The notes beneath the pieces are model-generated. The model did not search any database. It was not told where the DNA came from and worked only from the letters and a program-made list of their open reading frames with translations. Positions 20,498-61,669 of a stretch of DNA of 64,000 bases are shown here, in pieces (position 1 is the first letter of the stretch; each line of letters begins with the position of its first letter). Made by a program: the position numbers and the translations under genes. The stretch is from IMG/VR virus record IMGVR_UViG_3300027996_002186, positions 419,263 to 483,262 of that record; one strand, given 5' to 3'.

Positions 20498-20515
20498 TAA
20501 CCTTTTGGGTTTATA

Positions 20516-20535
20516 TTTTTAATATATATTAAAAA
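20516..20535. promoter_or_regulatory. Palindromic double TAATATATA motif (putative divergent late promoters)
   Basis: TTTTTAATATATATTAAAAA is a perfect palindrome between divergent genes that both carry the N-terminal motif. Confidence 0.6.
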
Positions 20536-20552
20536 TTCATTACGGAAATCAT

Positions 20553-21929
20553 ATGAAGTGGTTAAGAAATTACGAACTATTCAAAGAGTCTAAAACATAT
20601 TCTAATAAGAACTTGTTAAGTGAGATGTGTATCTCAATGGTTCTATTAAACAATGAATTCCTAGATAATATATTAGATAGAGGATTAAAAGCTAGATACT
20701 CTGATAACTCACAAATATTTTTAACAGATTTGAAGAATCTTTTACTTGCTAAGAATAGATTAAAGCTTGGTAAATTCGTTGATAACAAATGTGTTGTTGA
20801 TGATGAGATATCAAAGGTTAATGGTATGTTTAGTGACGTTACTTTTGATATAGAAAAGGATTGGAAAATTCTAGTTAATTCTAGAATCGCTGCTAGAAAT
20901 ATCATAGATAAATTAATACCAGATGAGAAATTAGAATCAGATAGAATAAGAAATATATTCTGGGTTGGTCCTAATAAAGATGGTGATTACCAAGAAGATA
21001 TTGTTATCGAATTAACAGATGGTAGACAATATTCATTTTTCTTAAATAAGAATCTTACTTCAAGTAAGACATCATCATTTAACTTATTTGCTGAAGAATT
21101 AATTGGATCTGATTTAGATAGATTATTCAAAGCAGATTACTTACCTAGATGGGATAAGTTAACACAAGAATGGGTAAGAGTAATTTATGAAAATGCTAAC
21201 AAGAATATACAGCTACACATTGAGAAGTTCATAGACCCTAAAAGGATTGATTCTATGGGTTACTTTGAGTATTTTGATATAAGACATAGTGATGTTAGAT
21301 TCAAGCACTTAGGTGAGTTTATAAGAGATTTTGATAAAAACATATTAAAGTTCCAAGATTTAATGACTGAGATTTGGAAGAAGAGAGACATTTGTTTTTC
21401 TGATCCTGAAAAAGTTTATAAAGAATGGACTGAGAGTAAGATAGTTATTCTTAACTCTAAGATATTGGAAAATTTATTAACAACATCATTGAAAGCAAAC
21501 TTCGCTGAGAACATCGAGAGAATGGAAGATGGGTTTAAGTTAGCAAGTGGTACAGTTAAAATGAAATTATTCAAAACACTTGTTGAGAAAATAGGATGTT
21601 TAGAAAGACCTCTGTATTTCTTAGGTAATAATGGTAACGTATTTCATATGGTACCATCAAGAGAATTCTTTAGAGAGAATTATGATGACTTAAAAATAAA
21701 ATTTGATTACCACGTTAACTTCACAGTTAGTGAAGAAGAAGATAATAATGATTTTAATGTTAAGATTAAATTAGAATTGGATGATACCACTTTAATTGAG
21801 ATGTTTATTCTTGTTAAATTCTCTGGTGGTGAGATGTCTGGTAAGCTATCTGCTAAGCACAAATTCGAATTACCTGAAAATTTCAATTATTTAATTTCTA
21901 AGAAACAATTAGGAGAGAACGAGGAATAG
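20553..21929 (+). CDS. Hypothetical protein with N-terminal capsid-targeting-like motif
   Basis: MKWLRNYELFKES; 458 aa. Confidence 0.7.
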   Translation: MKWLRNYELFKESKTYSNKNLLSEMCISMVLLNNEFLDNILDRGLKARYSDNSQIFLTDLKNLLLAKNRLKLGKFVDNKCVVDDEISKVNGMFSDVTFDIEKDWKILVNSRIAARNIIDKLIPDEKLESDRIRNIFWVGPNKDGDYQEDIVIELTDGRQYSFFLNKNLTSSKTSSFNLFAEELIGSDLDRLFKADYLPRWDKLTQEWVRVIYENANKNIQLHIEKFIDPKRIDSMGYFEYFDIRHSDVRFKHLGEFIRDFDKNILKFQDLMTEIWKKRDICFSDPEKVYKEWTESKIVILNSKILENLLTTSLKANFAENIERMEDGFKLASGTVKMKLFKTLVEKIGCLERPLYFLGNNGNVFHMVPSREFFRENYDDLKIKFDYHVNFTVSEEEDNNDFNVKIKLELDDTTLIEMFILVKFSGGEMSGKLSAKHKFELPENFNYLISKKQLGENEE

Positions 21930-41338: not shown

Positions 41339-42802
41339 TTATTGACTTACCATCTTTATCACTTCTCCATTTGAATAATGATAAAGTAATAATCCCTCAG
41401 AATATTCATTAACTTCTTGTCCCATAAAATTTAATACTTTAATCAATTTCCTTTCTTTAATTTCATTATTTATTGTTATTATATCAAATGTTTTTGATAA
41501 ACCATTAAAATCAAACTGTGTTAATTTATAATAATTAACTCCTCTCTTTATACTCACATCAATATATTTATAACTTTTCGTCATTATTGAATTACCAGCA
41601 CCACTAAGAGTGTGTATAGTTTCCCAGTTATATCCATCAATTGATCTTTCTATATTATAATAATCATTATTTATTTCTGTGGCAGTTACCCATTTTAATA
41701 ACCCCTGTCGGCCGCTAGTACCGATTATCAATTCACCATTAAAAAAAACTAAGTCAATTGGTAATGGGGCTAAGTTACAACCACCTGATATATTATTAAG
41801 TATGTATTGATAATCACACTGGTCTCCAGCAAATCCATCAACAACTAAGAAGATACATTCACCAGCTGCTACATTGAAATTGCTAGAGGACCAACTAGAT
41901 CCTGGATTTGATGGACTCGGAGCAGATTCAATAAATGTTAGATTATTTGCAGTTCCGCTAAATATTGTCATCTGTAATCCATAGTTAGGAGACGGGTTAA
42001 CACAGTTTGTTATTCCACTAAAGTCTATGTTATAAACCCCTGCCAATGTTGTGCAGAAACTAAACCAAGAACTATTGTTAACCACATAAGGAACATCATC
42101 TCCCGGTGTGCATGTTGGACAAGTTGTTCCAATATTACCATCTAAATTTTCACCACCTGATATTAAATCTTCTGGTGTGTATCCGGTATTAGTACCGTTG
42201 TATGTTTGGCCACAAGAATCTATACCAGCTGATCCACTAGAAATATTATTAACCAAGGGACTAAAAACACCAATACAAAATTCTGTGTGTCTATCATTTG
42301 GTCCTCCACAATACAAATCAACGACTTGTACTAAGTATGTTGCTCCGATAGTAAGACTGGTGAGCATCGTGTTTTGTCCGGGATCCCCGTTATGTAAATA
42401 ATTATAAATTTCAGTACCACACACAGGTAAACACCCTAAGTTAGCATCATATATTCTAATATGTGGACTAACACAATTAGTGTAATTAATCTTATTAAAA
42501 GCGAATACTAGAGAATCGTTATTTGCTGTGAAACTATACCAAACAGAATGTTCAGTTGATCCTCCACCATAATTAGTATAACATTCACCAACTTGTAAAG
42601 TTGCGTCAAATGTTGTTCCTGTACAATTTAAACCAGCATCAATAACTAGTATTGATGCTGATGAACAATCATCATTCATAGGAGCAGCTTTAAGTTGTAT
42701 ATTAACAACTTTTTTATCAGGCATAAACCATTCTGTTGAATCATATTGAGAATATCCAATTGTTGATATCAACAGTATTAGTACTAATACTATTTTATTC
42801 AT
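41339..42802 (-). CDS. Secreted Cys-rich protein with T9SS type-A-like C-terminal region
   Basis: Signal peptide ending GYS|Q; NDDC..A and VWYSF.A domains; PLPIDL..F...W.TATEINND...IERS.DG; C-terminal LNFMGQEV...YSNG...K. Confidence 0.8.
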   Translation of the reverse strand: MNKIVLVLILLISTIGYSQYDSTEWFMPDKKVVNIQLKAAPMNDDCSSASILVIDAGLNCTGTTFDATLQVGECYTNYGGGSTEHSVWYSFTANNDSLVFAFNKINYTNCVSPHIRIYDANLGCLPVCGTEIYNYLHNGDPGQNTMLTSLTIGATYLVQVVDLYCGGPNDRHTEFCIGVFSPLVNNISSGSAGIDSCGQTYNGTNTGYTPEDLISGGENLDGNIGTTCPTCTPGDDVPYVVNNSSWFSFCTTLAGVYNIDFSGITNCVNPSPNYGLQMTIFSGTANNLTFIESAPSPSNPGSSWSSSNFNVAAGECIFLVVDGFAGDQCDYQYILNNISGGCNLAPLPIDLVFFNGELIIGTSGRQGLLKWVTATEINNDYYNIERSIDGYNWETIHTLSGAGNSIMTKSYKYIDVSIKRGVNYYKLTQFDFNGLSKTFDIITINNEIKERKLIKVLNFMGQEVNEYSEGLLLYHYSNGEVIKMVSQ

Positions 42803-42884
42803 TTTTTATTATGTTTAATTTGTAGTTATGTACCTTATATATTAAAAATATACAATTGTTATATGAGGTTTTAATATATAAGTT

Positions 42885-43436
42885 ATGAAATTTTTAAAAA
42901 AATATAAATTTTTTGAATTAAAAACAAGTACATATTTATCAGCTGCTGATAAGCTAGAAGGATTACATCCAACAAGAGCTAAGAATATTAGGAAATATGT
43001 AGATGATCAACAAAGAGTTGATGTTGATTATCTTGACCCAAGACCATTTCATATAAATAATGATATCTATTATATCACCGGTATTACCAAAGATGAATAT
43101 GGGGTTGGATCATTACCAGAAGGTGAGTTAGTATTTAGAATCGATGTTGAGTTTAAATCATCAACCACAAGTGACGAAAGAATTGAGATGATTATATTTA
43201 ACAATGAGAAATTTATCAAGGATGATATAGAATTAGATGGATCACCAATCAATAGGGTAAACCTTAAATTTAAAAGACTAATAGGTACTGAACATGAACA
43301 AGAACAAGAAAGAACATTATCCAGAAGATTCTTTTTTGAAACTAGAAAAGAAGCAAGAGCCTTTCTTTCTATTATAGAAAGTGAATTGGGTATTAAAATG
43401 CTTATTAAAATAAATCAAATATATAAAACTAACTAA
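42885..43436 (+). CDS. Hypothetical protein with N-terminal capsid-targeting-like motif
   Basis: MKFLKKYKFFE; TAATATATA at 42872-42880. Confidence 0.7.
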   Translation: MKFLKKYKFFELKTSTYLSAADKLEGLHPTRAKNIRKYVDDQQRVDVDYLDPRPFHINNDIYYITGITKDEYGVGSLPEGELVFRIDVEFKSSTTSDERIEMIIFNNEKFIKDDIELDGSPINRVNLKFKRLIGTEHEQEQERTLSRRFFFETRKEARAFLSIIESELGIKMLIKINQIYKTN

Positions 43437-43443
43437 GTTTACG

Positions 43444-43668
43444 TTATTGATTCTTCAATTTAACAATTTCTCTTTTAATAGAAAAAATTTCAGAATATTT
43501 TTCTTTTTTGAAATCCACCATTAATGAATCGGTGTCAAGTTTACCTTTGTGATAATCTCTATTACGATCATACAAAGCAAAATGATATTCAGGAATACTT
43601 TTTCTAATCTTATTAATCTTCTTTGTTAGAAGACATATCTTGTATGCTTTTACAATCTCATTTTTCAT
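43444..43668 (-). CDS. Basic hypothetical protein
   Basis: ORF track. Confidence 0.5.
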   Translation of the reverse strand: MKNEIVKAYKICLLTKKINKIRKSIPEYHFALYDRNRDYHKGKLDTDSLMVDFKKEKYSEIFSIKREIVKLKNQ

Positions 43669-43730
43669 ATTGAGTATATATAATATTTTAATCTAAGGTT
43701 TTAAGTATGTTTATCAAAATTCAAAACAAT

Positions 43731-43776
43731 TATACAAATATAAGTATAAATATACAAATATACAAATATACAAATA
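43731..43776 (+). repeat. TATACAAA octamer x4 (three in tandem) upstream of a tagged-ORF operon
   Basis: Copies at 43731, 43751, 43759, 43767. Confidence 0.7.
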
Positions 43777-44055
43777 ATGGAATCGGATTATATAATAGAT
43801 TTTAAAAGACTTAATGAATTAACTTCACATGAAAATGACAACCCATCATCAAATCAGGGAGGGTTTGGTGCGATGTACATCCACACAACTACTAGAAAAC
43901 TTATCAAAGAATATATGGAAATATACCAAGGTAGGTATAGCAGAAGTAGTGATGGGAAGAAAGTAGATGAGGTTATAGAAACTCTACACTTTAATCGAAT
44001 ACTTATATCAAAATCTGATATAAGAGATGGTAAAATAAAAGAAATATTAGAATGA
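43777..44055 (+). CDS. Hypothetical protein with C-terminal tag
   Basis: Ends IRDGKIKEILE. Confidence 0.7.
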   Translation: MESDYIIDFKRLNELTSHENDNPSSNQGGFGAMYIHTTTRKLIKEYMEIYQGRYSRSSDGKKVDEVIETLHFNRILISKSDIRDGKIKEILE

Positions 44056-44262
44056 ACAAAGACAAAGAAATTTAATTTATGGTAATGAGGAATTATAAAA
44101 AAATGTTATCAAACTTAGTAGCAAATATTGTTGCTTATGATAATTGGTCAGATGAATTTTCACGAAAGGAAATAAACAAACTTTATAAATTATTAATTGC
44201 AATCCGAACAGGAACTCCTGTTAAGAGAATCTAAATTAGAAGGTGTTTTAGATGAGAATTAA
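44052..44262 (+). pseudogene. Disrupted tagged ORF (in-frame TAA plus frameshift)
   Basis: MNKDKEI*FMVMRNY...KLL in one frame; LQSEQELLLRESKLEGVLDEN* in the +1 frame; overlaps both neighbours like an operon gene. Confidence 0.6.
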
Positions 44263-44473
44263 ACTAAAAGATATGCATGATAATATAACTTATAACGAAC
44301 AACACCAAGTAATTTATAAAGGTATTAATTTAGGAATAACAAGAGAAAATATAACAGACTATCAATTTCAAACCGGATTCGACCCAGTTGAAATGGTAGA
44401 AAATTTATACAAACAATCTTTACCAGTGGTTAGAGATAAAAAACTAAATCAAATATTAGATGAAGAAAATTAA
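44252..44473 (+). CDS. Hypothetical protein with C-terminal tag
   Basis: Ends VRDKKLNQILDEEN. Confidence 0.7.
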   Translation: MRIKLKDMHDNITYNEQHQVIYKGINLGITRENITDYQFQTGFDPVEMVENLYKQSLPVVRDKKLNQILDEEN

Positions 44474-44804
44474 AATGTACGATTTCTTATCGTCAAAAGA
44501 AGGTATTTATATCTCATACTTAATCAAAGAGGTTGATAAAAATGAATCAATTTGGAAATCAACCTATGAAAGCAGAGATAAAAAGCTAACCTTATTATTA
44601 AACGAAGACTTACTCATAGTTAGTGAGAACGTGGCGGAACATTACAAATCAATAAAAAATAAGATTAATGATTTAGATTTTGTTAGTTCGGATATTATAA
44701 AAAATATGGATGCGCTGGTTGAAGAACTTGATAAGACAGTACAATATACAGAATACGTAACAGACAAAATAAAGGAATGTGAATGTCAGGATATAAAGGA
44801 ATAA
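44460..44804 (+). CDS. Hypothetical protein with internal tag
   Basis: Internal SRDKKLTLLL. Confidence 0.65.
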   Translation: MKKIKMYDFLSSKEGIYISYLIKEVDKNESIWKSTYESRDKKLTLLLNEDLLIVSENVAEHYKSIKNKINDLDFVSSDIIKNMDALVEELDKTVQYTEYVTDKIKECECQDIKE

Positions 44805-45061
44805 TTAAATATGTAGAAGAACATTTCGATAATAGATTTACTTTTATTTCGACCACATTCTTACACTCACACTCACCAAGTTATAGGAATAATGAATTTT
44901 TCACAAAAATGGAAATGATTATACTCGATAACTTTGATGGGGAAACACATAATATAAAAATTATGTATAAAACAAACAAGATTTTAATAAATAAACTTAA
45001 TAAAATAATCCGTGATAAAAGGGGCGATGTTATAGATAATATTATTAAAGTGTATGAGTGA
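44783..45061 (+). CDS. Hypothetical protein with variant tag
   Basis: Ends KRGDVIDNIIKVYE. Confidence 0.6.
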   Translation: MSGYKGIIKYVEEHFDNRFTFISTTFLHSHSPSYRNNEFFTKMEMIILDNFDGETHNIKIMYKTNKILINKLNKIIRDKRGDVIDNIIKVYE

Positions 45062-45272
45062 TGGTATTAGATTACACAAAATAGGAGCCGAGAAGACTAG
45101 AGTATTTGAGGTTAACTTTGATGAAGTTTATGACCATTATAAACAAAAAGCAGAAGATGCTGGTTATTTTGGAGATCTTAAATTCATTAAAGAGAGGGGC
45201 AAAATAATAGTTTATTCTGTGATAGAGTTACCACCTGATGATGATGAATTAATCATCCGAGTTTCCTCTTAA
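45054..45272 (+). CDS. Hypothetical protein
   Basis: Coupled ORF. Confidence 0.55.
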   Translation: MSDGIRLHKIGAEKTRVFEVNFDEVYDHYKQKAEDAGYFGDLKFIKERGKIIVYSVIELPPDDDELIIRVSS

Positions 45273-45731
45273 ACGCTTAGTCATTTCCTCATAAGAGATT
45301 GGTATTCTCCAATAAAGTGATACATGAGAACATTCTTTATTTGAGTACCTTTCTAAATCATCTATTTTTATGAATTGACTATCATCATCTTTACGTTTAC
45401 CACCACCCACATGAACTTTAATAGCAAATATTGGTTGTATTATATATGAATATGTCTTTAAGAATTCATTTGATCTGTATATAACATCGAAAACATCACC
45501 AAATCTAAATGTTGGTACGGAAAAATCTTGTACGTGATCCTCATTAAAAATACCGTGTATTTCAACTCTTAAGCTATCACCAATAACTTCACCCCTTCTT
45601 TCAGAAGTTACAGTAGCCTCTAGATTTTGATCACGAGCATCGCATAATATATCATTAAGGTCATCAATTATAATTGACTCTTCCTCTTTGGTTATATCCT
45701 CAAATATTTTATATTTAATCAGGTACTTCAT
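45249..45731 (-). CDS. Paralogous-domain family protein
   Basis: MKYLIKYKIFED; DLNDILCDARDQNL...VIYRSNEFLK. Confidence 0.7.
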   Translation of the reverse strand: MKYLIKYKIFEDITKEEESIIIDDLNDILCDARDQNLEATVTSERRGEVIGDSLRVEIHGIFNEDHVQDFSVPTFRFGDVFDVIYRSNEFLKTYSYIIQPIFAIKVHVGGGKRKDDDSQFIKIDDLERYSNKECSHVSLYWRIPISYEEMTKRLRGNSDD

Positions 45732-46797
45732 TTATAAATTTCATACTTATTTCTTTTACGACTGGTCTAACATCAGTCTCTAAATCTGATTCCGATATAG
45801 ATATTTCAAAATCATCAAACTGCATTTCAGATTTAAATTTATATTCACCATCTTTCTTACCAACATATGAAAATTCTTCTTTCCACTCATTCATACCATT
45901 ATCAAGTACTTGAAATTCTATTGGGATTGATCCATTTGGATCAAAAGATGGGTTTCTTGCTTCTTCTCTCGATTTGTGTGAAGTGTTATTGTTTATTCCG
46001 TTAGGAAAATGTTTATCTAAAAAATCTAATAAACCCTTTATATTGAAATCATCTAAGCTTTTTAATTTCTCTGGATGAGGTGGGTAACTAAATGTCCCTC
46101 TTTTGTTATGTTGGCTAAACCTAATTGTAATGTTTTCAACATCATATTTAATTATATCCTTTATTTGGTTGATTCTATAATCGACATCATCTAATAGAAT
46201 AGTATTTTGTCCTCTTTTATAAAGAAGTACACCTATACCATATTTTGTAAATCCATTGGATGGCATACTTCTTTCCCTACTTGGGGTGACCATATAACCA
46301 TATCCCAAATCTTCCATATCATACAACATACTCTCAACATCACCACCGACATCATTATTATCTATATTTGTAATAGACTCATTTAGACTACAATCAGTTA
46401 CGTTTATATCAATATACCAAACTTCTGTCCCAATATAATCCAAAATATCTGAACTACTTAATTGGTACCATTCATTACCACTTAGATGTATCTCATATGT
46501 GCAAAAATTACAACCCTTTGACTTAACATATTGTGAAACTCTATATAAAGAATCAGATAGTTCTTTTGTTATTTCAAATTTCCCAGACATACTACCATCC
46601 TTGGTTGGTGTTATCTGAAAAAATATTCTATCAACCCCACGATTCGATCGTGTAATTTTCTTATTTATGAAAAGACCTAAATCCTCCACTTCTAATAAAA
46701 TATCTTTGATATCATCAAATAAATCCAAGAGGATTGCTTGAGGAAATTGAGGATATTTTGATTTCTCAAATAATTTATATGTTTCTAAATATTTCAT
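45715..46797 (-). CDS. Paralogous-domain family protein, two domain copies
   Basis: MKYLETYKLFE; DIKDILLEVEDLGL; SLNES linker; DVESMLYDMEDLGY. Confidence 0.7.
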   Translation of the reverse strand: MKYLETYKLFEKSKYPQFPQAILLDLFDDIKDILLEVEDLGLFINKKITRSNRGVDRIFFQITPTKDGSMSGKFEITKELSDSLYRVSQYVKSKGCNFCTYEIHLSGNEWYQLSSSDILDYIGTEVWYIDINVTDCSLNESITNIDNNDVGGDVESMLYDMEDLGYGYMVTPSRERSMPSNGFTKYGIGVLLYKRGQNTILLDDVDYRINQIKDIIKYDVENITIRFSQHNKRGTFSYPPHPEKLKSLDDFNIKGLLDFLDKHFPNGINNNTSHKSREEARNPSFDPNGSIPIEFQVLDNGMNEWKEEFSYVGKKDGEYKFKSEMQFDDFEISISESDLETDVRPVVKEISMKFINEVPD

Positions 46798-47774
46798 ATC
46801 TTAAATCTTAATCTAATATTGAAGCTGTGATAATGGCAATTCATTAACTCATCTATTGATTTCATATCTGCCCATTTATTTTGAAAGGATGCCGTTGCGA
46901 CCGAGATGAATAACTCATAACCAAGAGTTGTCATATAAGCATCTAGTCTTCTAACTACTTCACCGAACCATTCTGGTAAATCAAGTGATCCACTTCTATC
47001 AACCTCATCCCTCATATTAATTGTATCTATATTAATATAGAATGGTATGAAATAACCCTCTTTAATCTCATAATCAACATCATTATCAATAAACTCAATA
47101 CAAATATCATCAAGATCTCTTCTTAACTCAGATTTCTCGGTGTTCCGGAAGTTTTGATTTAAGTGGGTGTCCGAAAACAAATGTTGCTTCCGTTCGGTAA
47201 ATCTTACCAGACCAAACTGAGGTGATTCTACTTTACTCTCTGTGTAATATCCCGATGAAATTCTAATCGGAGGCCTTGTTTTTTTTGTTTTTATATCTAT
47301 TTGTGATATCTTAAAATAACCACTATCGAATTCAGAAATATTCTCTAGTTTTTCTAGATTTATATCTAAATCACACACACCCATTTCTGTATAATCAACG
47401 TTAAAAGCGGAGTTTTGATAAAATGCTCCAAACCTTAAATCACTATCTAAATATTCATCAAGTCTCATAATAATATCTATCAATTCTTCTGTTATTTTTA
47501 TATCACCAGAGTCACTCCCAGCACCAGAAGAAATATCATACTTATCATATATCTCAATCATCATATCATTATAAATACCTGATTTAGAATGCATTGAAGT
47601 TTGTTGATTGTAATCAACAAACAAATGACCTGTTAAAGATTCACCATCCATTGTTGATGATATTATACGATATTGTAGCCCTAAATCAATAAGATCCAAA
47701 CAGATATCATTGATATTATCCATTTCATCTGCACTTATCCCAACACTTTCATTAAAACTTTTTAAGTATTTCAT
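46794..47774 (-). CDS. Paralogous-domain family protein, two domain copies
   Basis: MKYLKSFNES; NINDICLDLIDLGL; YTES linker; DLDDICIEFIDND...RRLDAYMTTLG. Confidence 0.7.
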   Translation of the reverse strand: MKYLKSFNESVGISADEMDNINDICLDLIDLGLQYRIISSTMDGESLTGHLFVDYNQQTSMHSKSGIYNDMMIEIYDKYDISSGAGSDSGDIKITEELIDIIMRLDEYLDSDLRFGAFYQNSAFNVDYTEMGVCDLDINLEKLENISEFDSGYFKISQIDIKTKKTRPPIRISSGYYTESKVESPQFGLVRFTERKQHLFSDTHLNQNFRNTEKSELRRDLDDICIEFIDNDVDYEIKEGYFIPFYINIDTINMRDEVDRSGSLDLPEWFGEVVRRLDAYMTTLGYELFISVATASFQNKWADMKSIDELMNCHYHSFNIRLRFKI

Positions 47775-47811
47775 ATATAAATCTATATATTAATATGGTA
47801 AACCCATTACA

Positions 47812-48456
47812 ATGGTAAAAAGATATCTTGATGAAATTAATCTAAATAAAACACAAGGCCACATAACTTGTTATGTTAATAACCCCAGATACAACCTATT
47901 AAAGATACATAGTGATGTAGTCCGTATAGACTTCACACACTTATATAATCGTGTTTTGATACAGATGGATGATGAAGGACTTATACCTGATGAGAAGGTA
48001 AATATAGAATCAATAAAATATTTATTAAGTATTAAGGAAGATGTAGAAGAATCTGATATGTCTAATTGGAGATACGTTTTCAACTCGATATGGAGTAGGG
48101 TTTTTCGAAGAAATCAAAATGGTGCTAATATTGTGTGTGATTACTTACACCATTTTTACAAAGAACTTTTATACAAAAATAATAATGAAATTATTTATAT
48201 AGACACTGATAGTATTATTTTAAATGGGTTAAGCCAAGATGTTAAAAAACTAATAGATGAGTTAGAACTACCATATAAAATTGTTGATGTAGATTATTTT
48301 TATTTAATTGCTAAAAAGCGTTACGCTTATACAGATGAGAATCATAATATTAAAATAAAAGGATTACTTAAAAAGGAATTAAACCGTTTTGAAAAACTAG
48401 AATCTATGATGAGAACACATATAAGAGAAGATAAACTTATAAGTATTGGGTTATAA
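47812..48456 (+). CDS. Minimal family-B DNA polymerase palm-like protein with C-terminal tag
   Basis: IDFTHLYN (motif A), RYVFNSIWS (motif B-like), YIDTDSI (motif C), KKRYAY...IKGL; ends IREDKLISIGL. Confidence 0.75.
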   Translation: MVKRYLDEINLNKTQGHITCYVNNPRYNLLKIHSDVVRIDFTHLYNRVLIQMDDEGLIPDEKVNIESIKYLLSIKEDVEESDMSNWRYVFNSIWSRVFRRNQNGANIVCDYLHHFYKELLYKNNNEIIYIDTDSIILNGLSQDVKKLIDELELPYKIVDVDYFYLIAKKRYAYTDENHNIKIKGLLKKELNRFEKLESMMRTHIREDKLISIGL

Positions 48457-48570: not shown

Positions 48571-50601
48571 ATGAAAATGTATAAATACCCAGAATTTAAA
48601 TACCCAAACTTAGAAACATATATATCAGAACTTGAGAGTATATTAAATAAGTCAGAATTAGTAATAAATGAATTGTTAAAAATTGATAATAAAACATATG
48701 ATACTTTCCTAAAGCCATATTTCATGGCTTATGAAGATATAAACAATCATTACTTTTATCTATCACACATAAATTCAGTTAAGAATACTGATGATACACA
48801 ACGTGTTGAAACTGAGAGCTTACCAATTATGAGTGATTGGTACACAAAGATAGGTCAACGAGATGACATTCATCAAGCATTATTGGAGGTTTCGAAAACA
48901 AATCTTAACCCAAGTCAGCGCATAGTAATCGAACAATCATTGCTTAGTAACAAACTAAAGGGTATTGGTCAAGAAGATTCAATTAAGAAAAGGCTTGGTG
49001 AAATTAGCAAAGAGTTATCTGAGTTATCTGATTCATTTTCTACAAACCTACTAAAAGCTACAAAGGATTTCAAACTAGAAGTAAAAAATCCAGAAGATGT
49101 TAGTGAGTTCCCTGATGATGAATTACAAAGACATGTAAAAGAGGATACTGATCATTGGGAATTTACCTTACAAGCACCATCATACTCAGCTTACTTAAAG
49201 TATGGATCTAACACAGATATAAGAGAGAAATTATCCAAAGCATTATCAACAAGAGCTACTGAAAATGAAGAACTTATTGAAAAAATATTAACTCTTAAAA
49301 ACGAAAAGGCTAAAATATTAGGATATAAAAATTACGCTGAGATATCGATATTAACAAAAATGGCTGATAGTCCAAATGAAATAGTTGGGTTTTTGGATAG
49401 GTTAGCAACAATCGCCTTACCTATTAAGTCAAAAGAAGATGATGAATTATTATCATTCACTGAAAGAAAGTATGGCGTAACACATTTAAACTCTTGGGAT
49501 AAAGGTTATTACACAAATAAATATAAGGAAAGTGTTTATGATTTTAAGTCAGAAGATTTGAAACCATATTTTGAACAATCAATGGTGTTAAATGGTTTAT
49601 TTGACTTTCTGTATGAAAAATTCAAGCTTAAATTTACTAAAGTAGATACTTATGTTTGGGATGAAAAGGTTACTGTGTATGATATAACACGTAATGGTGA
49701 AGAACATTCAAGAGTTTATATCGATCTAGAATCTAGAGATGATAAAAGATCCGGTGCTTGGATGAATAATTCAGAAGTTGGTTATGTAAAGGAAAATGGT
49801 GAAAAGGTTTTACCAATTGCTTATATAACTTGCAATTTCACACCATCAACTGATAAGTTACCATCATTACTTTCACACTATGAAGTAGAAACACTATTTC
49901 ATGAGATGGGACATGTATTACAACACGTCTGTTCAGAAGTGGAAGATTTCACATACGCTGGTATAGGTGGTATCGAGTGGGATGCTGTTGAGTGGAGTTC
50001 TCAATTTTTAGAACTATTTGTTTATGAAGGAGATGTATTAAGGAAATTTGGTAAACACCATGAAACTGGTGAAATAATACCGGATGAGTTCATTAAAAAG
50101 ATTAACGATTTAAGAACATACAGAGCAGCTAATGGAATCATAGGACAAGTGAAGAATGGTAAATTCGATATGACAATTTTCCAATCAGATGATACGTCAA
50201 AGGAATATGTACAATCAACACTTGATAAGATAATAGAAGATTTTGGATTGGAATCTTTTGATGGTAATAAATGGCAATGTGGGTTTAGTCATATTTTTGC
50301 TGGTGGATACTCAGCAGGGTATTACTCTTATAAATGGTCAGAAGTTCTTTCAGTTGATACTTTCTTAAAATTTAGAGAAAATGATGATAGTGATAAGTAT
50401 TATGAAGAATTTTTGAGTAAGGGCTCATCTCTGCCAAGTATGGATATGTTTGTTAATTATATGGGTAGAAAGCCTAGTGAAGAATCATTAGTAAACTACC
50501 TAATCGGATTACAACCTGTTTCGTCAGGTCGAGAGTTTGAATCCCTTCAAGCGAAGTTTGATTCAAAAAGAATTAATAATGAACTTAGAGGGTTGGGGTA
50601 A
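48571..50601 (+). CDS. prlC: M3A metallopeptidase, oligopeptidase A (OpdA/PrlC)-like
   Basis: KRSGAWM, TLFHEMGH, WDAVE.SSQFLE, FSHIFAGGYSAGYYSYKWSEV. Confidence 0.93.
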   Translation: MKMYKYPEFKYPNLETYISELESILNKSELVINELLKIDNKTYDTFLKPYFMAYEDINNHYFYLSHINSVKNTDDTQRVETESLPIMSDWYTKIGQRDDIHQALLEVSKTNLNPSQRIVIEQSLLSNKLKGIGQEDSIKKRLGEISKELSELSDSFSTNLLKATKDFKLEVKNPEDVSEFPDDELQRHVKEDTDHWEFTLQAPSYSAYLKYGSNTDIREKLSKALSTRATENEELIEKILTLKNEKAKILGYKNYAEISILTKMADSPNEIVGFLDRLATIALPIKSKEDDELLSFTERKYGVTHLNSWDKGYYTNKYKESVYDFKSEDLKPYFEQSMVLNGLFDFLYEKFKLKFTKVDTYVWDEKVTVYDITRNGEEHSRVYIDLESRDDKRSGAWMNNSEVGYVKENGEKVLPIAYITCNFTPSTDKLPSLLSHYEVETLFHEMGHVLQHVCSEVEDFTYAGIGGIEWDAVEWSSQFLELFVYEGDVLRKFGKHHETGEIIPDEFIKKINDLRTYRAANGIIGQVKNGKFDMTIFQSDDTSKEYVQSTLDKIIEDFGLESFDGNKWQCGFSHIFAGGYSAGYYSYKWSEVLSVDTFLKFRENDDSDKYYEEFLSKGSSLPSMDMFVNYMGRKPSEESLVNYLIGLQPVSSGREFESLQAKFDSKRINNELRGLG

Positions 50602-52224: not shown

Positions 52225-52824
52225 ATGAAAAATAATATAGATTCTAAACAAAATAATAGTGATGAAAAAGAGTTGGTTAAAAAATATTTAAATGGAGACA
52301 CAAGAGCTTTTACAACATTGTTCAAAACATATAAACCTATTTTCTTCACTAACGCGATAAAATGGTACGGTAACAACAACTACAATAACGAAGAGATTGA
52401 GGATATGGCTATGGAATTCTTAGGTAGGATATCATCAAAATTACATTTATATGATCCAGAAAAAAGTATTTTTGGTACTTGGATTACCAATTCGATGAAG
52501 AATTTTATGATAGAGTGTCACCGGAAAAGAACTCGACAAAAAAGAATACCAAGTAATAAAAAGATTTCTTTTGACGAAATCATAACAGAACCTTCAATTA
52601 ATGAGACATATAAAAATATAGAGATTAAAACCTATCGAAAATTAATTAAAATGATGGTAGAGTCTTTAGGTAGTGATGATACACGAATATTTAACGAAAT
52701 ATTTCTAAAAGGTAGAACAAAATCAGAAGTAGCTAAAGAAATGGGTATAATATATAGCACTTTAGAGTATAGAATTAAGAGAGTAAAAAGAAGATTAGAG
52801 AAATTTAGACCAGAAGATATGTAG
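52225..52824 (+). CDS. ECF-type sigma-70 family factor
   Basis: GD..AF..LF..Y, EIEDMA.E, F.TWI....N...E..R, C-terminal HTH (SEVAKEMGI..ST...RI.R). Confidence 0.85.
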   Translation: MKNNIDSKQNNSDEKELVKKYLNGDTRAFTTLFKTYKPIFFTNAIKWYGNNNYNNEEIEDMAMEFLGRISSKLHLYDPEKSIFGTWITNSMKNFMIECHRKRTRQKRIPSNKKISFDEIITEPSINETYKNIEIKTYRKLIKMMVESLGSDDTRIFNEIFLKGRTKSEVAKEMGIIYSTLEYRIKRVKRRLEKFRPEDM

Positions 52825-52925: not shown

Positions 52926-54251
52926 ATGAGATATTTTTTAACATTGGTAATATTATTATTTTCATTAACAAATGTCAATTCACAAGTAGCTAATGATGAT
53001 TGTCTTAACGCAATACCATTAGGTAATCTACCAAACCCATCTAATTGTGGTCCAGGACCTATGAATAATGGACAAGGTTCTCCAATCACATTTAATAATC
53101 TTACAAATGTAAACTCATTAACAGAGGCTCCATATACTACACTAATAAATTGCCAAGGAACTCCAGGAAATAATATGTCTTCTCCAGCTACCGATGTTTG
53201 GTATTCATTCGTTGCAACAGGAAATTCATTAGATGTTACAATTAATGGAAATATAAACCAACCGAATGTAGGTATATGGACAGGAAATTGTGGAGCATTA
53301 ATAGGGGTCGGTTGTGATATTGGTGGAGGAGGAAACTTAAATACTACATCTCAATTAACACCCGGACAAACATATTACATTCAAATCAGTGGAGGAAACC
53401 CTGCAGATCAAGGAACATTCGATTTAACACTACAAAATAATAATAGTTGTGATGATTGTTTATTATCATCTAATATGACCGTCACTCCATTACCAATAAA
53501 TGGAACCTATCAACCAGGAACTACTGTAACATTTTGTTTTACAGTAACAGAATGGTCACAAGAAAATCAAAATTGGTTTCATGGTGTTGTTCCTATAATG
53601 GCATCTGGTTGGGGTCCTATCACACCAATAAGTGGAGCAAATACTTGTGACACTGGTCCAGGGGTTTGGACTTGGTTTAATGGTATCAACACACCAAACG
53701 GAAATTCAAATGGGTTTTTCTTTGATGGTGATTTGTTTAACAATCCAAATGGAAATCCTACAAACAATTTCGGAGATAATTGTAATGGTAATGTCAATTG
53801 GGAATTTTGTTGGGAAGCAACAACAACTAGTTGTCCACCTGGTCAAGATGGAGATAACCTAAGTGTTTTTATAGAAACTTACGCTGATGGTGAAACTGGT
53901 AGCTGGACGAATATAGCTTGTCAAAATGATCCTATATTTGCATTCAGTGGTAGTCTTACGTGCTGTCCGATACCAACTGAAATACACACAGATGAAATAT
54001 GTTTAGGTGAAAATGATGGAACAATAACAGTAACAGGACAAGGTAGTGCACCATTCGATTATGTTTGGGAAGACTCTAATGGAAATATAATACAAACATC
54101 AAATAATATAAATGGTTCGGATAATATGTTAAATCTTGCACCAGATATATATACTATCACCGTCACAGATAATGATGGATGTGTACAAACAATAACAATA
54201 ACTATATTAGCAGGAGGCCAAGCCAGTATAGTGGGTATATGGCATAATTAA
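52926..54251 (+). CDS. Secreted Cys/Asn/Gly-rich adhesin-like protein with a SprB-like repeat
   Basis: Signal peptide ending NS|Q; NDDC..A, DVWYSF.A; C...NDG.I....G..PF.Y.W...Y..TVTD..GC; ends IVGIWHN. Confidence 0.8.
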   Translation: MRYFLTLVILLFSLTNVNSQVANDDCLNAIPLGNLPNPSNCGPGPMNNGQGSPITFNNLTNVNSLTEAPYTTLINCQGTPGNNMSSPATDVWYSFVATGNSLDVTINGNINQPNVGIWTGNCGALIGVGCDIGGGGNLNTTSQLTPGQTYYIQISGGNPADQGTFDLTLQNNNSCDDCLLSSNMTVTPLPINGTYQPGTTVTFCFTVTEWSQENQNWFHGVVPIMASGWGPITPISGANTCDTGPGVWTWFNGINTPNGNSNGFFFDGDLFNNPNGNPTNNFGDNCNGNVNWEFCWEATTTSCPPGQDGDNLSVFIETYADGETGSWTNIACQNDPIFAFSGSLTCCPIPTEIHTDEICLGENDGTITVTGQGSAPFDYVWEDSNGNIIQTSNNINGSDNMLNLAPDIYTITVTDNDGCVQTITITILAGGQASIVGIWHN

Positions 54252-54274
54252 AAATAAAAAAAAACAATGAAAAA

Positions 54275-54832
54275 ATGAAAAAACTATTATTAATTTTAGG
54301 AATTATAGCACTATTTGTGAGTAATTCTTATTCGCAAATAACAACCAACCCTGACACTGTATGTGTTGGTGCAGTTGGTGAAAACTATTGGGTGACCAAT
54401 ACACCAGGATCAACCTATGATTGGACATTGAATGGTGGGGGTGGTTCAATTACATCTGGACAAGGAACTGACGCAATCACAGTTGATTGGGGTAATGTTC
54501 CAGGGTTATACCCAACAGCGGTAACTGTGGTAGAAACAAACGCTGCAGGATGTACTGATACGGTTGATTTGGATATCTTTATTTTACTACCAGCATTTAT
54601 ACAAATAGGACCTTTCTGTGAGGGTGACCCTTGTGTAACATTGACAGGAACTCCAGCTGGAGGTGCTTGGAGTGGAACAGGTGTTACATTAACGGCAGGT
54701 GTTTACGAATTTTGTCCTGTAACGTCAGGTAATGGTGTATTTAACTTAACTTACACAGTTGGTGGGTGTTCAATCGTGATGGTCGTAACTGTAAATGCTG
54801 CACCCGTATTGGGACCAATTATACATAATTAA
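54275..54832 (+). CDS. Secreted PKD/Ig-like protein
   Basis: Signal peptide ending SYS|Q; YDW...GG.I.SGQGT..ITV.W; ends LGPIIHN. Confidence 0.8.
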   Translation: MKKLLLILGIIALFVSNSYSQITTNPDTVCVGAVGENYWVTNTPGSTYDWTLNGGGGSITSGQGTDAITVDWGNVPGLYPTAVTVVETNAAGCTDTVDLDIFILLPAFIQIGPFCEGDPCVTLTGTPAGGAWSGTGVTLTAGVYEFCPVTSGNGVFNLTYTVGGCSIVMVVTVNAAPVLGPIIHN

Positions 54833-55425
54833 TGAAATATTTACTATCCATATTACTTTTAATACCTCTTTGGTTGTCTGCGCAAAATGTGCAGACAATT
54901 AAAGTGTGTACCGAAGACCAGTCATATATACAAGATTATTGGGTGGATAACCCCACGACAAGTAGTGTATATGAGTGGGTTGTGGAGGGTGGATCTATTG
55001 TTAATGGGCAAGGTACTGATTTTATTACAGTAAATTGGTTAAATATACCTTATGATATATACCAAATATCAGTTTCGGTTATTAGTAACATGTGTATTGG
55101 TGATACTTCATATTTATTAGTAGATATTGATGAATGTTCTTTTGATGGTGTTTACGTACCTAATTGCTTTACTATTAATGGTGATGGTATGAATGATACA
55201 TGGGGACCAGTATTTAATGGTGAGTGGGATGATTCACAATATATTATGTACATTTTTAATCGATGGGGTGAAATGATATGGGAATCACATAATCCACTAG
55301 AAACTTGGAATGGGTATTATCAAAATAAGTTATGTCAAAACGGAGTTTATGTTTGGAAGATGTACTACAAACCACTTAATAGTTATCAATTACAAACTCA
55401 CGGACACGTCACGCTATTAAAGTAA
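54832..55425 (+). CDS. Secreted PKD-like protein with T9SS type-B (gliding-motility-associated) C-terminal domain
   Basis: Signal peptide ending LSA|Q; YVPNCFTINGDGMND.W...IFNRWGE...WNG.Y...GVY.W...GHVTLLK. Confidence 0.9.
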   Translation: MKYLLSILLLIPLWLSAQNVQTIKVCTEDQSYIQDYWVDNPTTSSVYEWVVEGGSIVNGQGTDFITVNWLNIPYDIYQISVSVISNMCIGDTSYLLVDIDECSFDGVYVPNCFTINGDGMNDTWGPVFNGEWDDSQYIMYIFNRWGEMIWESHNPLETWNGYYQNKLCQNGVYVWKMYYKPLNSYQLQTHGHVTLLK

Positions 55426-61557: not shown

Positions 61558-61596
61558 TTAGTATTTGGTTTACTTTGATGTAAGTTATGTGTTTTG

Positions 61597-61669
61597 TTGT
61601 CCCACTAGGGCTCGAACCTAGACTCTTCTGTACCAAAAACAGACGTGTTGCCAGTTACACCATGGGACA
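61597..61669 (-). tRNA. tRNA-Gln (anticodon UUG), 3' CCA not encoded
   Basis: TGTCCCA/TGGGACA acceptor stem, TCTGT-TTTTGGT-ACAGA anticodon arm, CTAGG-TTCGAGC-CCTAG T arm; followed by CAA rather than CCA. Confidence 0.93.

What the first reader, a model, noticed from the sequence alone, without database searches (positions are those of the whole stretch)
42836..48456. The two tags are mutually exclusive and sit in separate transcription units
Seen: no ORF in the window carries both motifs. N-motif genes lie behind TAATATATA (42885; operon 47774-45249), while the neighbouring C-tag operon 43777-45272 lacks it and has TATACAAA repeats instead. Inference: a two-address protein sorting system, with late proteins sent to the capsid and earlier proteins sent to another site, where new genes are recruited by gaining a short terminal peptide.
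Basis: inference. Interest (0 to 1): 0.65.

Follow-up and report, generated by a model that had tools for sequence, protein, structure and literature searches.

The report
Two terminal peptide tags in megaphage
About a fifth of the genes of this marine giant phage carry one of two short end-peptides, one at the start of late proteins and one at the end of early proteins and never both, which looks like a built-in addressing system whose destinations are still unknown.

Summary
The window lies in a 312,709-bp fragment of a marine megaphage related to LR745206.1 (635 kb).

- **N-motif:** M-K-[YH]-[LI]-K-x-[FY]..E heads 63 of 406 ORFs.
- **C-tag:** R-[DNE]-x-K-[LI]-x-x-[LI]-[LG]-(I) ends 25 to 31 ORFs.
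- **Exclusivity:** no ORF has both. Expected 3.9 (P=0.013) here. In 325 kb of LR745206.1 it is 0 against 9.1 expected (P=3e-5). The window alone (expected 1.0) proves nothing.
- **Promoters:** N genes sit in units headed by TTAATATATA, which also heads virion genes. C genes sit mostly in units headed by the Bacteroidetes sigma-A box TAnnTTTG (Fisher 3e-8 and 2e-16).
- **Misreading:** They point away from the C-tag operon.

Both tags are protein-level add-ons. The N-motif is a ~20-residue extension on RNA ligase and CCA-adding enzyme homologues and is disordered in a model. The C-tag ends a 215-residue mini family-B polymerase family, where its Arg is invariant.

Destinations are inferred, not shown. 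The N-motif most resembles the T4 capsid targeting sequence. The C-tag looks like a PIP-box-like docking helix or a Clp degron. The three N genes of operon 47774-45249 are tandem paralogues, not independent recruits.

The parts
42836..42844 (-). TAATATATA late-type promoter box, 33 nt upstream of the signal-peptide protein gene 41339-42802
42872..42880 (+). TAATATATA late-type promoter box, 4 nt before ATG 42885 (near-leaderless layout)
42885..43436 (+). N-motif gene (183 aa, MKFLKKYKFFE...). It belongs to a six-member paralogue group that continues with TYxxAAxKL. Orthologues at 47-50% identity keep the motif.
43444..43668 (-). 74-aa gene without a tag, the likely target of the TATATTTG boxes in the divergent spacer
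43731..43775 (-). On the minus strand they read TATATTTG (the Bacteroidetes -7 box TAnnTTTG): exact boxes 66 and 86 nt upstream of the minus-strand ATG 43668, plus a third CAAATATA copy.
43777..44055 (+). C-tag gene (92 aa, ends RDGKIKEILE)
44079..44234 (+). 51-aa ORF, a truncated remnant. Its first 48 residues are 81% identical to the start of a 144-aa C-tagged protein of LR745206.1. It has no tag.
44252..44473 (+). C-tag gene (73 aa, ends RDKKLNQILDEEN)
44460..45272 (+). Three more small ORFs of the same unit (114, 92 and 72 aa). The 92-aa one has only a degenerate tag (IRDKRGDVIDNIIKVYE). The other two have none at the C-terminus.
45249..45731 (-). N-motif gene (160 aa, MKYLIKYKIFE). In the AlphaFold2 model, residues 1-7 have pLDDT below 50 and the alpha/beta domain starts at residue 15.
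45715..46797 (-). N-motif gene (360 aa, MKYLETYKLFE), paralogue of its two neighbours
46794..47774 (-). N-motif gene (326 aa, MKYLKSFNE), first gene of the late unit
47784..47792 (-). TAATATATA late-type promoter box, 9 nt before the minus-strand ATG 47774
47812..48456 (+). Mini family-B DNA polymerase core (214 aa) with motifs A, B, C (YIDTDS) and KKRY. It ends with the C-tag IREDKLISIGL inside helix 187-211.
48571..50601 (+). M3 oligopeptidase with a ~35-residue C-terminal extension ending in a weak C-tag-like RINNELRGLG

Best explanation
The window belongs to a fragment of a marine megaphage that probably infects Bacteroidota. Its proteome carries two modular terminal peptides that mark two temporal classes of proteins.

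**Shown**
- The N-motif (M-K-[YH]-[LI]-K-x-[FY]-(x-x-F)-E, with a variant M-I-K-K-[YW]-x-x-F-x-x-E-S) is a roughly 10-residue peptide plus linker. It sits in front of unrelated proteins.
- N-motif genes lie in units headed by the phage-specific box TTAATATATA, which also heads virion genes.
- The C-tag (R-[DNE]-x-K-[LI]-x-x-[LI]-[LG]-(I), 0 to 5 residues from the end) closes small proteins and some enzymes. Most of these lie in units headed by the host-type sigma-A box TAnnTTTG.
- The two tags never share a protein.

**Inferred**
- Each tag is read by one common receptor.
- The N-motif most likely works like the T4 capsid targeting sequence. It would dock late proteins, among them RNA-repair and possible counter-defence enzymes, onto the prohead core, and a gp21-type protease would cut it off after the conserved Glu.
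- The C-tag most likely is a short amphipathic helix that docks early proteins, the mini polymerase included, onto one hub. Its register matches a PIP box ([QDNE]-x-x-[LI]-x-x-hydrophobic-hydrophobic), so a clamp-like replisome hub is my first guess. A phage ClpCP degron is my second.

**My odds**
- Tags are real, protein-level, modular and split by temporal class: 0.85.
- N-motif means virion or prohead targeting: about 0.35 to 0.4.
- C-tag means hub docking of any kind: about 0.5. A clamp specifically: about 0.15 to 0.2.
For: **Frequency and position**
- N-motif: 48 to 51 N-termini against 7 of 1865 internal Met. With variants, 63 of 406 ORFs.
- C-tag: 25 C-termini against 12 internal matches in 84,000 residues. 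Arg (25/25) and Lys (24/25) are fixed although the pattern allowed alternatives.

**Protein-level constraint**
- Synonymous codon use inside the N-motif is close to background.
- Position 3 takes Y, H, W or F.

**Modularity**
- Most N genes are not BLAST paralogues of each other and have no Pfam family.
- The motif is an add-on of about 20 residues before the conserved domains of a T4 Rnl1 homologue (query residue 27 aligns to T4 residue 8) and a CCA-adding enzyme homologue (query 35 to residue 16).
- It also heads a 2H-phosphoesterase (Acb1-like) plus exonuclease protein.
- In the AlphaFold2 model, residues 1-7 have pLDDT below 50 and lie outside the domain.

**Temporal split**
- This record: N genes 55 late-type, 4 early-type, 4 unassigned. 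C genes 3, 12 and 10. Fisher 3e-8.
- LR745206.1: N genes 51 late-type and 4 early-type, C genes 9 and 43. Fisher 2e-16. No double-tagged ORF against 9.1 expected.
- TTAATATATA heads tail-fibre, neck-homologue and virion-protein operons.
- TAnnTTTG is the flavobacterial sigma-A -7 box at -12 to -5 (PMC9723704).
- The phage encodes two ECF-type sigma factors.

**Likeness to the T4 capsid targeting sequence**
- The T4 sequence is MKTYQEFIAE, about 10 residues, cut once by the prohead protease. It is the only part shared by otherwise diverse internal proteins (PMC3012670).
- T4-type and giant-phage proteases cut after Glu (PMC5694885).
- 55 of 63 N genes have hydrophobic-x-E ending at residues 5-14, against 88 of 343 other genes.
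- Relatives encode Peptidase_S77 (gp21-type) domains. Lak-A1 and PTm5 score above the cut-off, LR745206.1 scores E=1e-4.

**C-tag as a function-critical peptide**
- The mini polymerase has 78 relatives, all about 200-240 residues long. All 34 fetched (down to 21% identity) end with the tag or a close variant.
- Its Arg is invariant, as are motif-A Tyr45 and Asp131 of the YIDTDS motif.
- It lies at the end of a confident helix.

**Breadth**
- An unrelated contig (L029, 34% GC) has 13 of about 20 consecutive genes ending in the tag.
- Contig L031 (23% GC) has both tags.
Against: - No receptor was found for either tag.
- No clamp of any Pfam type was found in this record or in four related genomes.
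- This fragment holds no prohead protease, major capsid protein or scaffold, so the capsid link rests on relatives and on analogy.
- 63 tagged genes in what seems to be about half a genome would mean well over 100 different packaged proteins. That is more than the roughly 50 head proteins reported for SPN3US (PMC5694885).
- Part of the N class (at least 17 genes) is one paralogue family with further shared sequence. Common descent therefore explains part of the motif's spread.
- Genes within one operon are not independent, so the Fisher tests overstate significance.
- Late and early are inferred from promoter type and gene content, not measured. The 8-mer AATATATA also precedes UvsX, ribonucleotide reductase and ClpC genes.
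- The C-tag has aliphatic residues where a canonical PIP box has aromatic ones.
- About half of the short-spacing (probably leaderless) late promoters precede N genes. A role in translation start is therefore not fully excluded.
Confidence: 0.45

Rival explanations
1. One or both tags are degrons for a phage-encoded ClpC-ClpP protease. Early C-tagged proteins would be cleared once the phage ClpC is made, giving timed turnover rather than spatial sorting. Alternatively the N-motif could be an N-terminal recognition signal.
For: - The record encodes a ClpC homologue (E=1e-235 to B. subtilis ClpC) that lacks the adaptor-binding N-domain. It keeps a VGF ClpP-docking loop.
- LR745206.1 and Lak-A1 each encode two ClpP genes.
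- The ClpC gene lies behind an AATATATA box.
- The C-tag ends in non-polar residues at or near the C-terminus, as known Clp tags do (from my own knowledge of ssrA-type tags, not tested here).
Against: - In the mini-polymerase family the tag's Arg is as conserved as catalytic residues, and the tag lies in a confidently predicted helix. That fits a partner needed for function better than a disposal signal.
- Many tags are followed by 1-5 polar residues.
- No ClpP is present in this record.
- No binding test was possible.
Confidence: 0.2
2. The N-motif is only the best-conserved stretch of one huge, fast-evolving paralogue superfamily. It spread by gene duplication and is not a transferable address. 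The C-tag is likewise a family relic.
For: - At least 17 N genes share a second helix (IxDILLELxDxGY) and a repeated helix-strand unit.
- Six others share TYxxAAxKL.
- The three N genes in the finding's operon are adjacent paralogues.
- Small BLAST families exist among N genes.
Against: - The motif precedes enzymes of unrelated folds: an RNA ligase 1 homologue, a class II nucleotidyltransferase, and a 2H phosphoesterase plus DEDD exonuclease. In the first two, which were aligned to solved homologues, it is an extension those homologues lack.
- The C-tag closes a polymerase core, an M3 peptidase (as a weak variant) and dozens of unrelated small proteins.
- Even under this reading, strong constraint on a disordered N-terminal peptide needs a functional reason.
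Confidence: 0.15
3. The N-motif serves translation start on leaderless late mRNAs. It would act as an A/U-rich 5' coding signal or a binding site for a translational regulator, and the peptide itself would be a by-product.
For: - 41 of 84 AATATATA sites lie 3-9 nt from the ATG, and about half of these precede N genes.
- Bacteroidetes mRNAs lack Shine-Dalgarno sequences (abstract of PMC6847099).
- The motif is built largely of residues with A/U-only codons (K, Y, L, F, N, I).
Against: - Synonymous sites in the motif vary about as much as elsewhere. For example AAC makes up 43% of Asn codons.
- Position 3 accepts His and Trp, and the Glu is fixed. Both point to selection on the peptide.
- Many N genes are internal to operons with overlapping stop and start codons, not next to a promoter.
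- Orthologues at under 50% identity keep the residues.
Confidence: 0.07
4. The N-motif is a docking peptide for the phage's own Hsp70/DnaJ chaperones, or for another late assembly factor, rather than a capsid address.
For: - The record encodes Hsp70 (E=3e-245), a full DnaJ and a second J-domain protein.
- The motif is hydrophobic and aromatic with basic flanks, the general make-up of DnaK-binding peptides (from my own knowledge, not tested).
Against: - DnaK sites are degenerate and need no fixed N-terminal register or conserved Glu.
- Nothing links the motif to the chaperone genes by position or co-occurrence.
Confidence: 0.1

Closest known systems
T4 capsid targeting sequence (CTS) of internal proteins IPI-IPIII, removed by the prohead protease gp21
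   Same: - A peptide of about 10 residues at the very N-terminus, beginning MK, with aromatic residues at positions 3-4 and 7 and ending in Glu (T4: MKTYQEFIAE).
- It is the only part shared by otherwise diverse proteins, several of them counter-defence factors (PMC3012670).
- The genes are late.
- A gp21-type (S77) protease is present in the lineage.
   Different: - T4 tags a handful of proteins. Here 63 ORFs in 313 kb carry the motif, about 15% of the genes.
- The consensus differs.
- Packaging and cleavage are untested.
- No protease or scaffold was found in this fragment.
PIP-box and other clamp-binding C-terminal peptides of DNA polymerases and their partners
   Same: - A short peptide at the extreme C-terminus of a family-B polymerase core.
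- The register [QDNE]-x-x-[LI]-x-x-hydrophobic-hydrophobic is the same.
- The same peptide appears on many unrelated proteins, as with PCNA partners (the PIP consensus is from my own knowledge).
   Different: - Aliphatic residues replace the aromatic pair, and an invariant Arg and Lys are added.
- No clamp gene was detected in this or related genomes.
- Most carriers are tiny early proteins of unknown function.
ssrA-type and other terminal Clp degrons
   Same: - Short terminal peptides read by an AAA+ unfoldase.
- The phage lineage encodes ClpC and ClpP.
   Different: The tag is helical, highly conserved within a protein family and often followed by polar residues. No turnover data exist.
Phage P1 Dar proteins and giant-phage (phiKZ, SPN3US) ejection proteins with N-terminal propeptides
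   Same: Sets of diverse proteins are loaded into large heads through N-terminal regions and processed after Glu (PMC5694885).
   Different: Those propeptides are mostly long (over 100 residues in SPN3US) and lack one shared short consensus.

Membership tests
T4-type capsid targeting sequence | Short N-terminal peptide shared by otherwise unrelated proteins | tested here: met
T4-type capsid targeting sequence | Ends at a prohead-protease site (hydrophobic-x-Glu) | tested here: inconclusive
   55 of 63 N genes have such a triplet ending at residues 5-14, against 88 of 343 others. Actual cleavage is unknown.
T4-type capsid targeting sequence | Genome encodes a gp21-type (Peptidase_S77) prohead protease | tested here: inconclusive
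   Absent from this 313-kb fragment. Present in Lak-A1 and PTm5, and weakly in LR745206.1 (E=1e-4).
T4-type capsid targeting sequence | Tagged proteins are found inside virions with the tag removed | not testable with these tools
   No cultured member and no RNA or proteome data.
PIP-box / clamp-binding motif | Consensus Q-x-x-[LIM]-x-x-[FY]-[FY], or bacterial QL[SD]LF | tested here: not met
   The register matches, but positions 7-8 are I/L and L/G and position 1 is D, N, E or Q. It is PIP-like, not a PIP box.
PIP-box / clamp-binding motif | A sliding clamp is available as receptor | tested here: inconclusive
   No phage clamp by six Pfam models. The host clamp remains possible. The complex test gave no verdict.
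Family-B DNA polymerase (for ORF 47812-48456) | Motifs A (DxxxLYP), B (NSxYG), C (YxDTDS) and KKRY, with a palm/fingers fold | tested here: met
   Family profile against archaeal PolB, E=1e-10. Model pLDDT 91.9. Foldseek probability 1.0.
Family-B DNA polymerase (for ORF 47812-48456) | Exonuclease, N-terminal and thumb domains | tested here: not met
   The whole family is 200-240 residues long. It is only the catalytic core.
Bacteroidetes sigma-A promoter | -7 box TAnnTTTG close upstream of genes, in sense orientation | tested here: met
   About 30 TATATTTG sites lie 4-34 nt before ATGs, with extended consensus tTCCtTATATTTGT. The consensus is from PMC9723704. Transcription starts were not measured.

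The most novel reading that the evidence does not exclude
A whole clade of aquatic megaphages and other uncultured phages runs a proteome-wide two-tag addressing code.

- An N-terminal peptide would load more than 100 different late proteins into the giant capsid for co-injection. These include RNA-repair and anti-defence enzymes.
- A C-terminal PIP-like helix would gather dozens of early takeover proteins and a minimal polymerase on one hub.
- New functions would be recruited to either class simply by acquiring the peptide.
Probability: 0.2. Interest if true: 0.9.

Novelty: new variant of a known kind. Interest (0 to 1): 0.7.

Why it matters
**If the tags are addresses**
- They give a sequence-only way to split the dark proteome of megaphages, where over 70% of genes have no function, into virion or ejected cargo versus early takeover factors.
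- They predict which enzymes are injected with the DNA.
- They offer portable peptides for loading cargo into very large capsids, as the T4 capsid targeting sequence does.

**The C-tag**
- It is shared by a previously undescribed family of 215-residue minimal family-B polymerases and by runs of early genes in several phage lineages.
- This points to an unknown hub of early infection.

**Already useful, whatever the destinations**
- The two promoter consensus sequences.
- The frequent spacing of 4-5 nt to the ATG, which is probably leaderless. Only 5.5% of host mRNAs are leaderless (PMC9723704).
- Both help annotate these uncultured phages.

I found no mention of either motif in the megaphage paper I read or in full-text searches for motif strings.

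Tried and rejected
- **Family scans of the ten ORFs of the finding:** nothing except a weak polymerase hit for ORF 47812-48456 (Pfam and PHROGs).
- **Scans of 20 tagged proteins:** only the M3 peptidase came up (Pfam).
- **Scans of 21 large proteins:** few structural calls (PHROGs).
- **Major capsid protein, portal, sheath and terminase:** not identified in this record. BLAST with PTm5 proteins found only neck, SSB and two other homologues.
- **Clamp searches:** six Pfam models, all blank.
- **Complex prediction:** mini-polymerase tail (residues 150-214) with the E. coli beta clamp gave no verdict. This is no evidence either way.
- **Fold search of the N-motif protein model:** no match at E of 0.001 or better.
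- **RNA runs:** none hold the stretch, so I could not map transcription starts, and I did not use read laying.
- **Cultured relatives:** none carry the tags. PTm5 has none, and the Lak-A1 and LR756501 samples have almost none.
- **Atlas look-alikes:** only viral hypothetical clusters for the N-motif protein. For the C-tagged g143007 there is an ankyrin-repeat lead, which I did not follow.
- **RNA-level reading of the N-motif:** I consider it unlikely, from codon usage.
- **C-tag as a side effect of stop/start overlap:** rejected. Tagged and untagged genes overlap their downstream genes at similar rates. The final Ile (ATA) before TGA does, however, create the next ATG in several pairs.

Full report
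**Where the window lies**

The window is the minus strand of positions 8837-72836 of a 312,709-bp IMG/VR virus record with 29.4% G+C. CheckV calls the record 91% complete, but it is probably about half of a megaphage genome.

- A 1055-aa protein is 82% identical to one of LR745206.1 (634,780 bp) and 70% to one of LR756502.1 (642,428 bp). More distant relatives are LR756501 (735 kb), the Lak phages, Sphingomonas phage PAU and Tenacibaculum phages PTm1/PTm5.
- These two uncultured phages are the sister group of the marine megaphage Mar_Mega_1 (PMC9723777).
- The stretch occurs in marine and seawater metagenomes of 15 studies. None is an RNA library.
- I did not find terminase, sheath, major capsid protein or prohead protease in the record.
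- The early-type promoter matches the Bacteroidetes sigma-A box, which points to a Bacteroidota host.

**The N-motif**

I called 406 ORFs (ATG start, at least 50 aa, greedy non-overlapping).

- A strict pattern, M-[KREN]-[YHWFN]-[LIV]-x-x-[YFI], fits 48 N-termini once signal peptides are removed. It fits only 7 of 1865 internal Met positions.
- Position frequencies: K2 40/48, Y or H at position 3 41/48, L or I at position 4 47/48, F or Y at position 7 45/48. Then comes N-E, E-S or K-x-F-E.
- A small profile search adds three genes with miscalled starts. It also reveals a second form, M-I-(I)-K-K-[YW]-x-x-F-x-x-E-S. The total is 63 genes, or 15%.
- Synonymous codon use inside the motif is near background, and position 3 accepts Y, H, W and F. 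The constraint is therefore on the peptide, not on the RNA.
- The first Glu falls at residues 8-12 in 52 of 63 genes. 55 of 63 have hydrophobic-x-Glu ending at residues 5-14, against 88 of 343 other genes.

**The C-tag**

- The pattern [RK]-[DENQ]-x-[KRQ]-[LIV]-x-x-[LIV]-[LGI] occurs in the last 30 residues of 25 ORFs. It occurs only 12 times in 84,000 internal residues.
- Arg is found in 25/25 and Lys in 24/25, although the pattern allowed alternatives.
- The tag ends 0-5 residues from the C-terminus, once 15. About six weaker copies exist.
- There are two flavours: K-L-x-x-L-G-[ILV] at the very end, and K-[IL]-x-x-I-L followed by a few polar residues.

**Exclusivity**

| Data set | ORFs | N | C | Both observed | Both expected | P |
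|---|---|---|---|---|---|---|
| Window | 91 | 13 | 7 | 0 | 1.0 | 0.33 |
| Whole record | 406 | 63 | 25 | 0 | 3.9 | 0.013 |
| LR745206.1, seven stretches (325 kb) | 539 | 64 | 77 | 0 | 9.1 | 2.6e-5 |

The window alone says nothing.

**Promoters**

- The most enriched 8-mers upstream of genes are parts of TTAATATATA. 84 of 156 copies of AATATATA lie within 50 nt upstream of an ATG in sense orientation.
- Spacing to the ATG is bimodal. 41 sites lie 3-9 nt away (mostly 4-5). 43 sites lie 16-43 nt away, followed by an A-rich leader.
- The second enriched element is (tTCCt)TATATTTG(T), with about 30 sites and again a bimodal spacing.
- This second element equals the flavobacterial sigma-A -7 box TAnnTTTG, which spans -12 to -5 (PMC9723704). 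A 4-nt spacing would therefore give leaderless mRNA. Only 5.5% of mRNAs in that host are leaderless.
- TTAATATATA precedes a tail-fibre operon (287337-292075), virion-protein operons (203789, 222483), the neck homologue (139718) and the large proteins 46203 and 247521. I take it as the late or phage-specific class.
- The record encodes two ECF-type sigma factors. One lies in an early-type unit next to C-tag genes.
- I gave each gene the nearest upstream box within its same-strand run:

| Genome | Class | Late-type | Early-type | Unassigned | Fisher, N vs C |
|---|---|---|---|---|---|
| This record | N | 55 | 4 | 4 | 3e-8 |
| This record | C | 3 | 12 | 10 | |
| LR745206.1 | N | 51 | 4 | 9 | 2e-16 |
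| LR745206.1 | C | 9 | 43 | 25 | |

- Genes in one operon are not independent, so these P values are too optimistic. The direction is the same in both genomes.

**The finding's coordinates**

- TAATATATA at 42872-42880 lies 4 nt before the N gene 42885-43436.
- Its complement at 47784-47792 lies 9 nt before the first gene of the minus-strand N operon 47774-45249.
- A third copy at 42836-42844 (minus strand) serves the signal-peptide protein gene 41339-42802.
- The TATACAAA repeats at 43731-43775 read TATATTTG on the minus strand, 66 and 86 nt upstream of the small gene 43444-43668. They are not a promoter of the C-tag operon.
- That operon (43777-45272) has no box of either class. Of its six ORFs, two have clean tags and one a degenerate tag.
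- ORF 44079-44234 is a remnant. It matches only the first 48 residues (81% identity) of a 144-aa C-tagged protein of LR745206.1. This also explains the lone 141-nt nucleotide match.

**Are the tags modular?**

For modularity:
- Most N genes are not detectable paralogues of each other and have no Pfam family.
- Three carriers are recognisable enzymes. g132705 is a T4 RNA ligase 1 homologue, g92357 a CCA-adding-type nucleotidyltransferase, and g146746 a 2H phosphoesterase (Acb1-like) fused to a DEDD exonuclease.
- Alignment to solved homologues shows the motif and its linker as an extension of about 20 residues. Query residue 27 aligns to T4 Rnl1 residue 8. Query residue 35 aligns to residue 16 of a bacterial CCA enzyme.
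- In an AlphaFold2 model of ORF 45249-45731 (pLDDT 70.6), residues 1-7 are below pLDDT 50 and the alpha/beta domain starts at residue 15. The fold matched nothing solved.

Against pure modularity:
- At least 17 N genes, including all three of the finding's operon, share a further helix (IxDILLELxDxGY) and a repeated helix-strand unit.
- Six others, including 42885-43436, share TYxxAAxKL.

So both duplication and attachment to unrelated proteins have spread the motif.

**The C-tag and the mini polymerase**

- ORF 47812-48456 has family-B polymerase motifs A, B, C (YIDTDS) and KKRY.
- A profile of its family hits archaeal PolB at E=1e-10.
- The model has pLDDT 91.9 and matches PolB palm and fingers with Foldseek probability 1.0.
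- An exhaustive search of 1.84 billion representatives found 78 relatives. All are about 200-240 residues long, so this is a free-standing minimal core, not a gene fragment.
- All 34 sequences I fetched, down to 21% identity, end with R-x-x-K-L-x-x-[LI]-G-I or a close variant.
- The tag's Arg205 is one of only three invariant columns, with motif-A Tyr45 and Asp131 of the YIDTDS motif.
- The tag lies at the end of helix 187-211.
- Contigs that carry distant family members show the tag on neighbouring genes too. L029 (34% GC) has 13 of about 20 consecutive genes with it. L031 (23% GC) has both tags.
- A relative at about 50% protein identity keeps the same layout: N genes behind TTAATATATA and C-tag genes in the opposite units.

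**Mechanism**

What is shown:
- There are two protein-level terminal peptides, conserved over deep divergence.
- They attach to unrelated proteins, exclude each other, and are tied to two promoter classes.

What is inferred for the N-motif:
- The closest known thing is the T4 capsid targeting sequence MKTYQEFIAE. It is about 10 residues long, is the only element shared by diverse internal proteins, and is removed by the prohead protease after Glu.
- The likeness covers length, the MK start, the aromatic positions, the terminal Glu and late expression.
- It also covers cargo of plausible counter-defence or repair type.
- Gp21-type protease domains occur in relatives.
- The weak points are the very large number of carriers and the complete lack of particle data.

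What is inferred for the C-tag:
- Its place at the end of a polymerase core and its PIP-like register suggest a docking helix for a hub.
- No clamp gene was detectable (six models). A complex prediction with the E. coli clamp gave no verdict.
- The lineage also has its own ClpC, which lacks the N-domain and keeps a VGF loop, and two ClpP genes in LR745206.1. A degron reading is therefore a serious rival.
- The record further encodes Hsp70 and two J-proteins.

**Verdict**

- The TATACAAA detail is wrong.
- The idea of two classes of tagged proteins in separate temporal units is supported. Sorting to the capsid and to another site remains a reasonable but untested inference.
- I found no description of these motifs in the megaphage paper I read or in full-text searches.

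Noticed in passing
window 47812-48456; relatives P0012-P0087: A free-standing family of minimal family-B DNA polymerase cores, about 215 aa, with palm and short fingers only and no exonuclease or thumb. It has 78 clusters in 1.84 billion proteins, all phage-like in context. I found no Pfam model for it.
   Followed up: yes
whole record (G000), e.g. window 42872-42888 and genome 108883-108921: Both promoter classes often lie only 4-5 nt from the ATG: 41 of 84 AATATATA sites and about 8 of the roughly 30 TATATTTG sites. This implies many leaderless mRNAs, far more than the 5.5% reported for a Flavobacterium host.
   Followed up: partly
window 20497-20553 (genome 52284-52340): A palindromic TTTTTAATATATATTAAAAA lies between two divergent N-motif genes. 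It looks like a bidirectional late promoter.
   Followed up: no
genome 174646-176760 (L007:12647-14758), 129758-131638, 138110-139201, 251776-253551: The phage has its own chaperone and protease set: a ClpC without the N-domain but with a VGF loop, Hsp70, DnaJ, and a second J-protein interrupted by an intein with a homing endonuclease. ClpP is missing here, but LR745206.1 and Lak-A1 each have two copies.
   Followed up: partly
window 52225-52824 and genome 218578-219186: Two ECF-type sigma factor genes. The second lies in an early-type unit together with C-tag genes. They are candidates for reading TTAATATATA.
   Followed up: partly
genome 92357-93559, 132705-133970, 146746-148056: An RNA-repair and possible anti-defence set: a CCA-adding-type enzyme, a T4 Rnl1-like ligase, and a 2H phosphoesterase (Acb1-like) plus exonuclease. 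Each carries the N-motif variant as an N-terminal extension.
   Followed up: yes
window 44079-44234: A 51-aa ORF that is a truncated remnant of a 144-aa C-tagged gene of LR745206.1. It sits in a 141-nt island of 84% nucleotide identity between otherwise diverged genomes.
   Followed up: yes
whole record: CheckV's 91% completeness is probably an overestimate. The closest relatives are 635-656 kb, and terminase, sheath, capsid and protease genes are missing from this record.
   Followed up: partly
window 41339-42802, 52926-55425; genome 89851-90822, 114900-115925: Several phage genes encode proteins with clear N-terminal signal peptides, and some lie behind late boxes. Their C-terminal parts look like Bacteroidetes secretion-sorting domains by eye, but Pfam gave no hit for the one I scanned.
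   Followed up: partly
genome 143007-143582 (L005:17011-17583): A C-tagged 191-aa early protein whose language-model look-alikes are mostly ankyrin-repeat proteins (score 0.96). This is only a lead.
   Followed up: no
window 61596-61669: A tRNA-Gln (anticodon TTG) gene on the minus strand.
   Followed up: no
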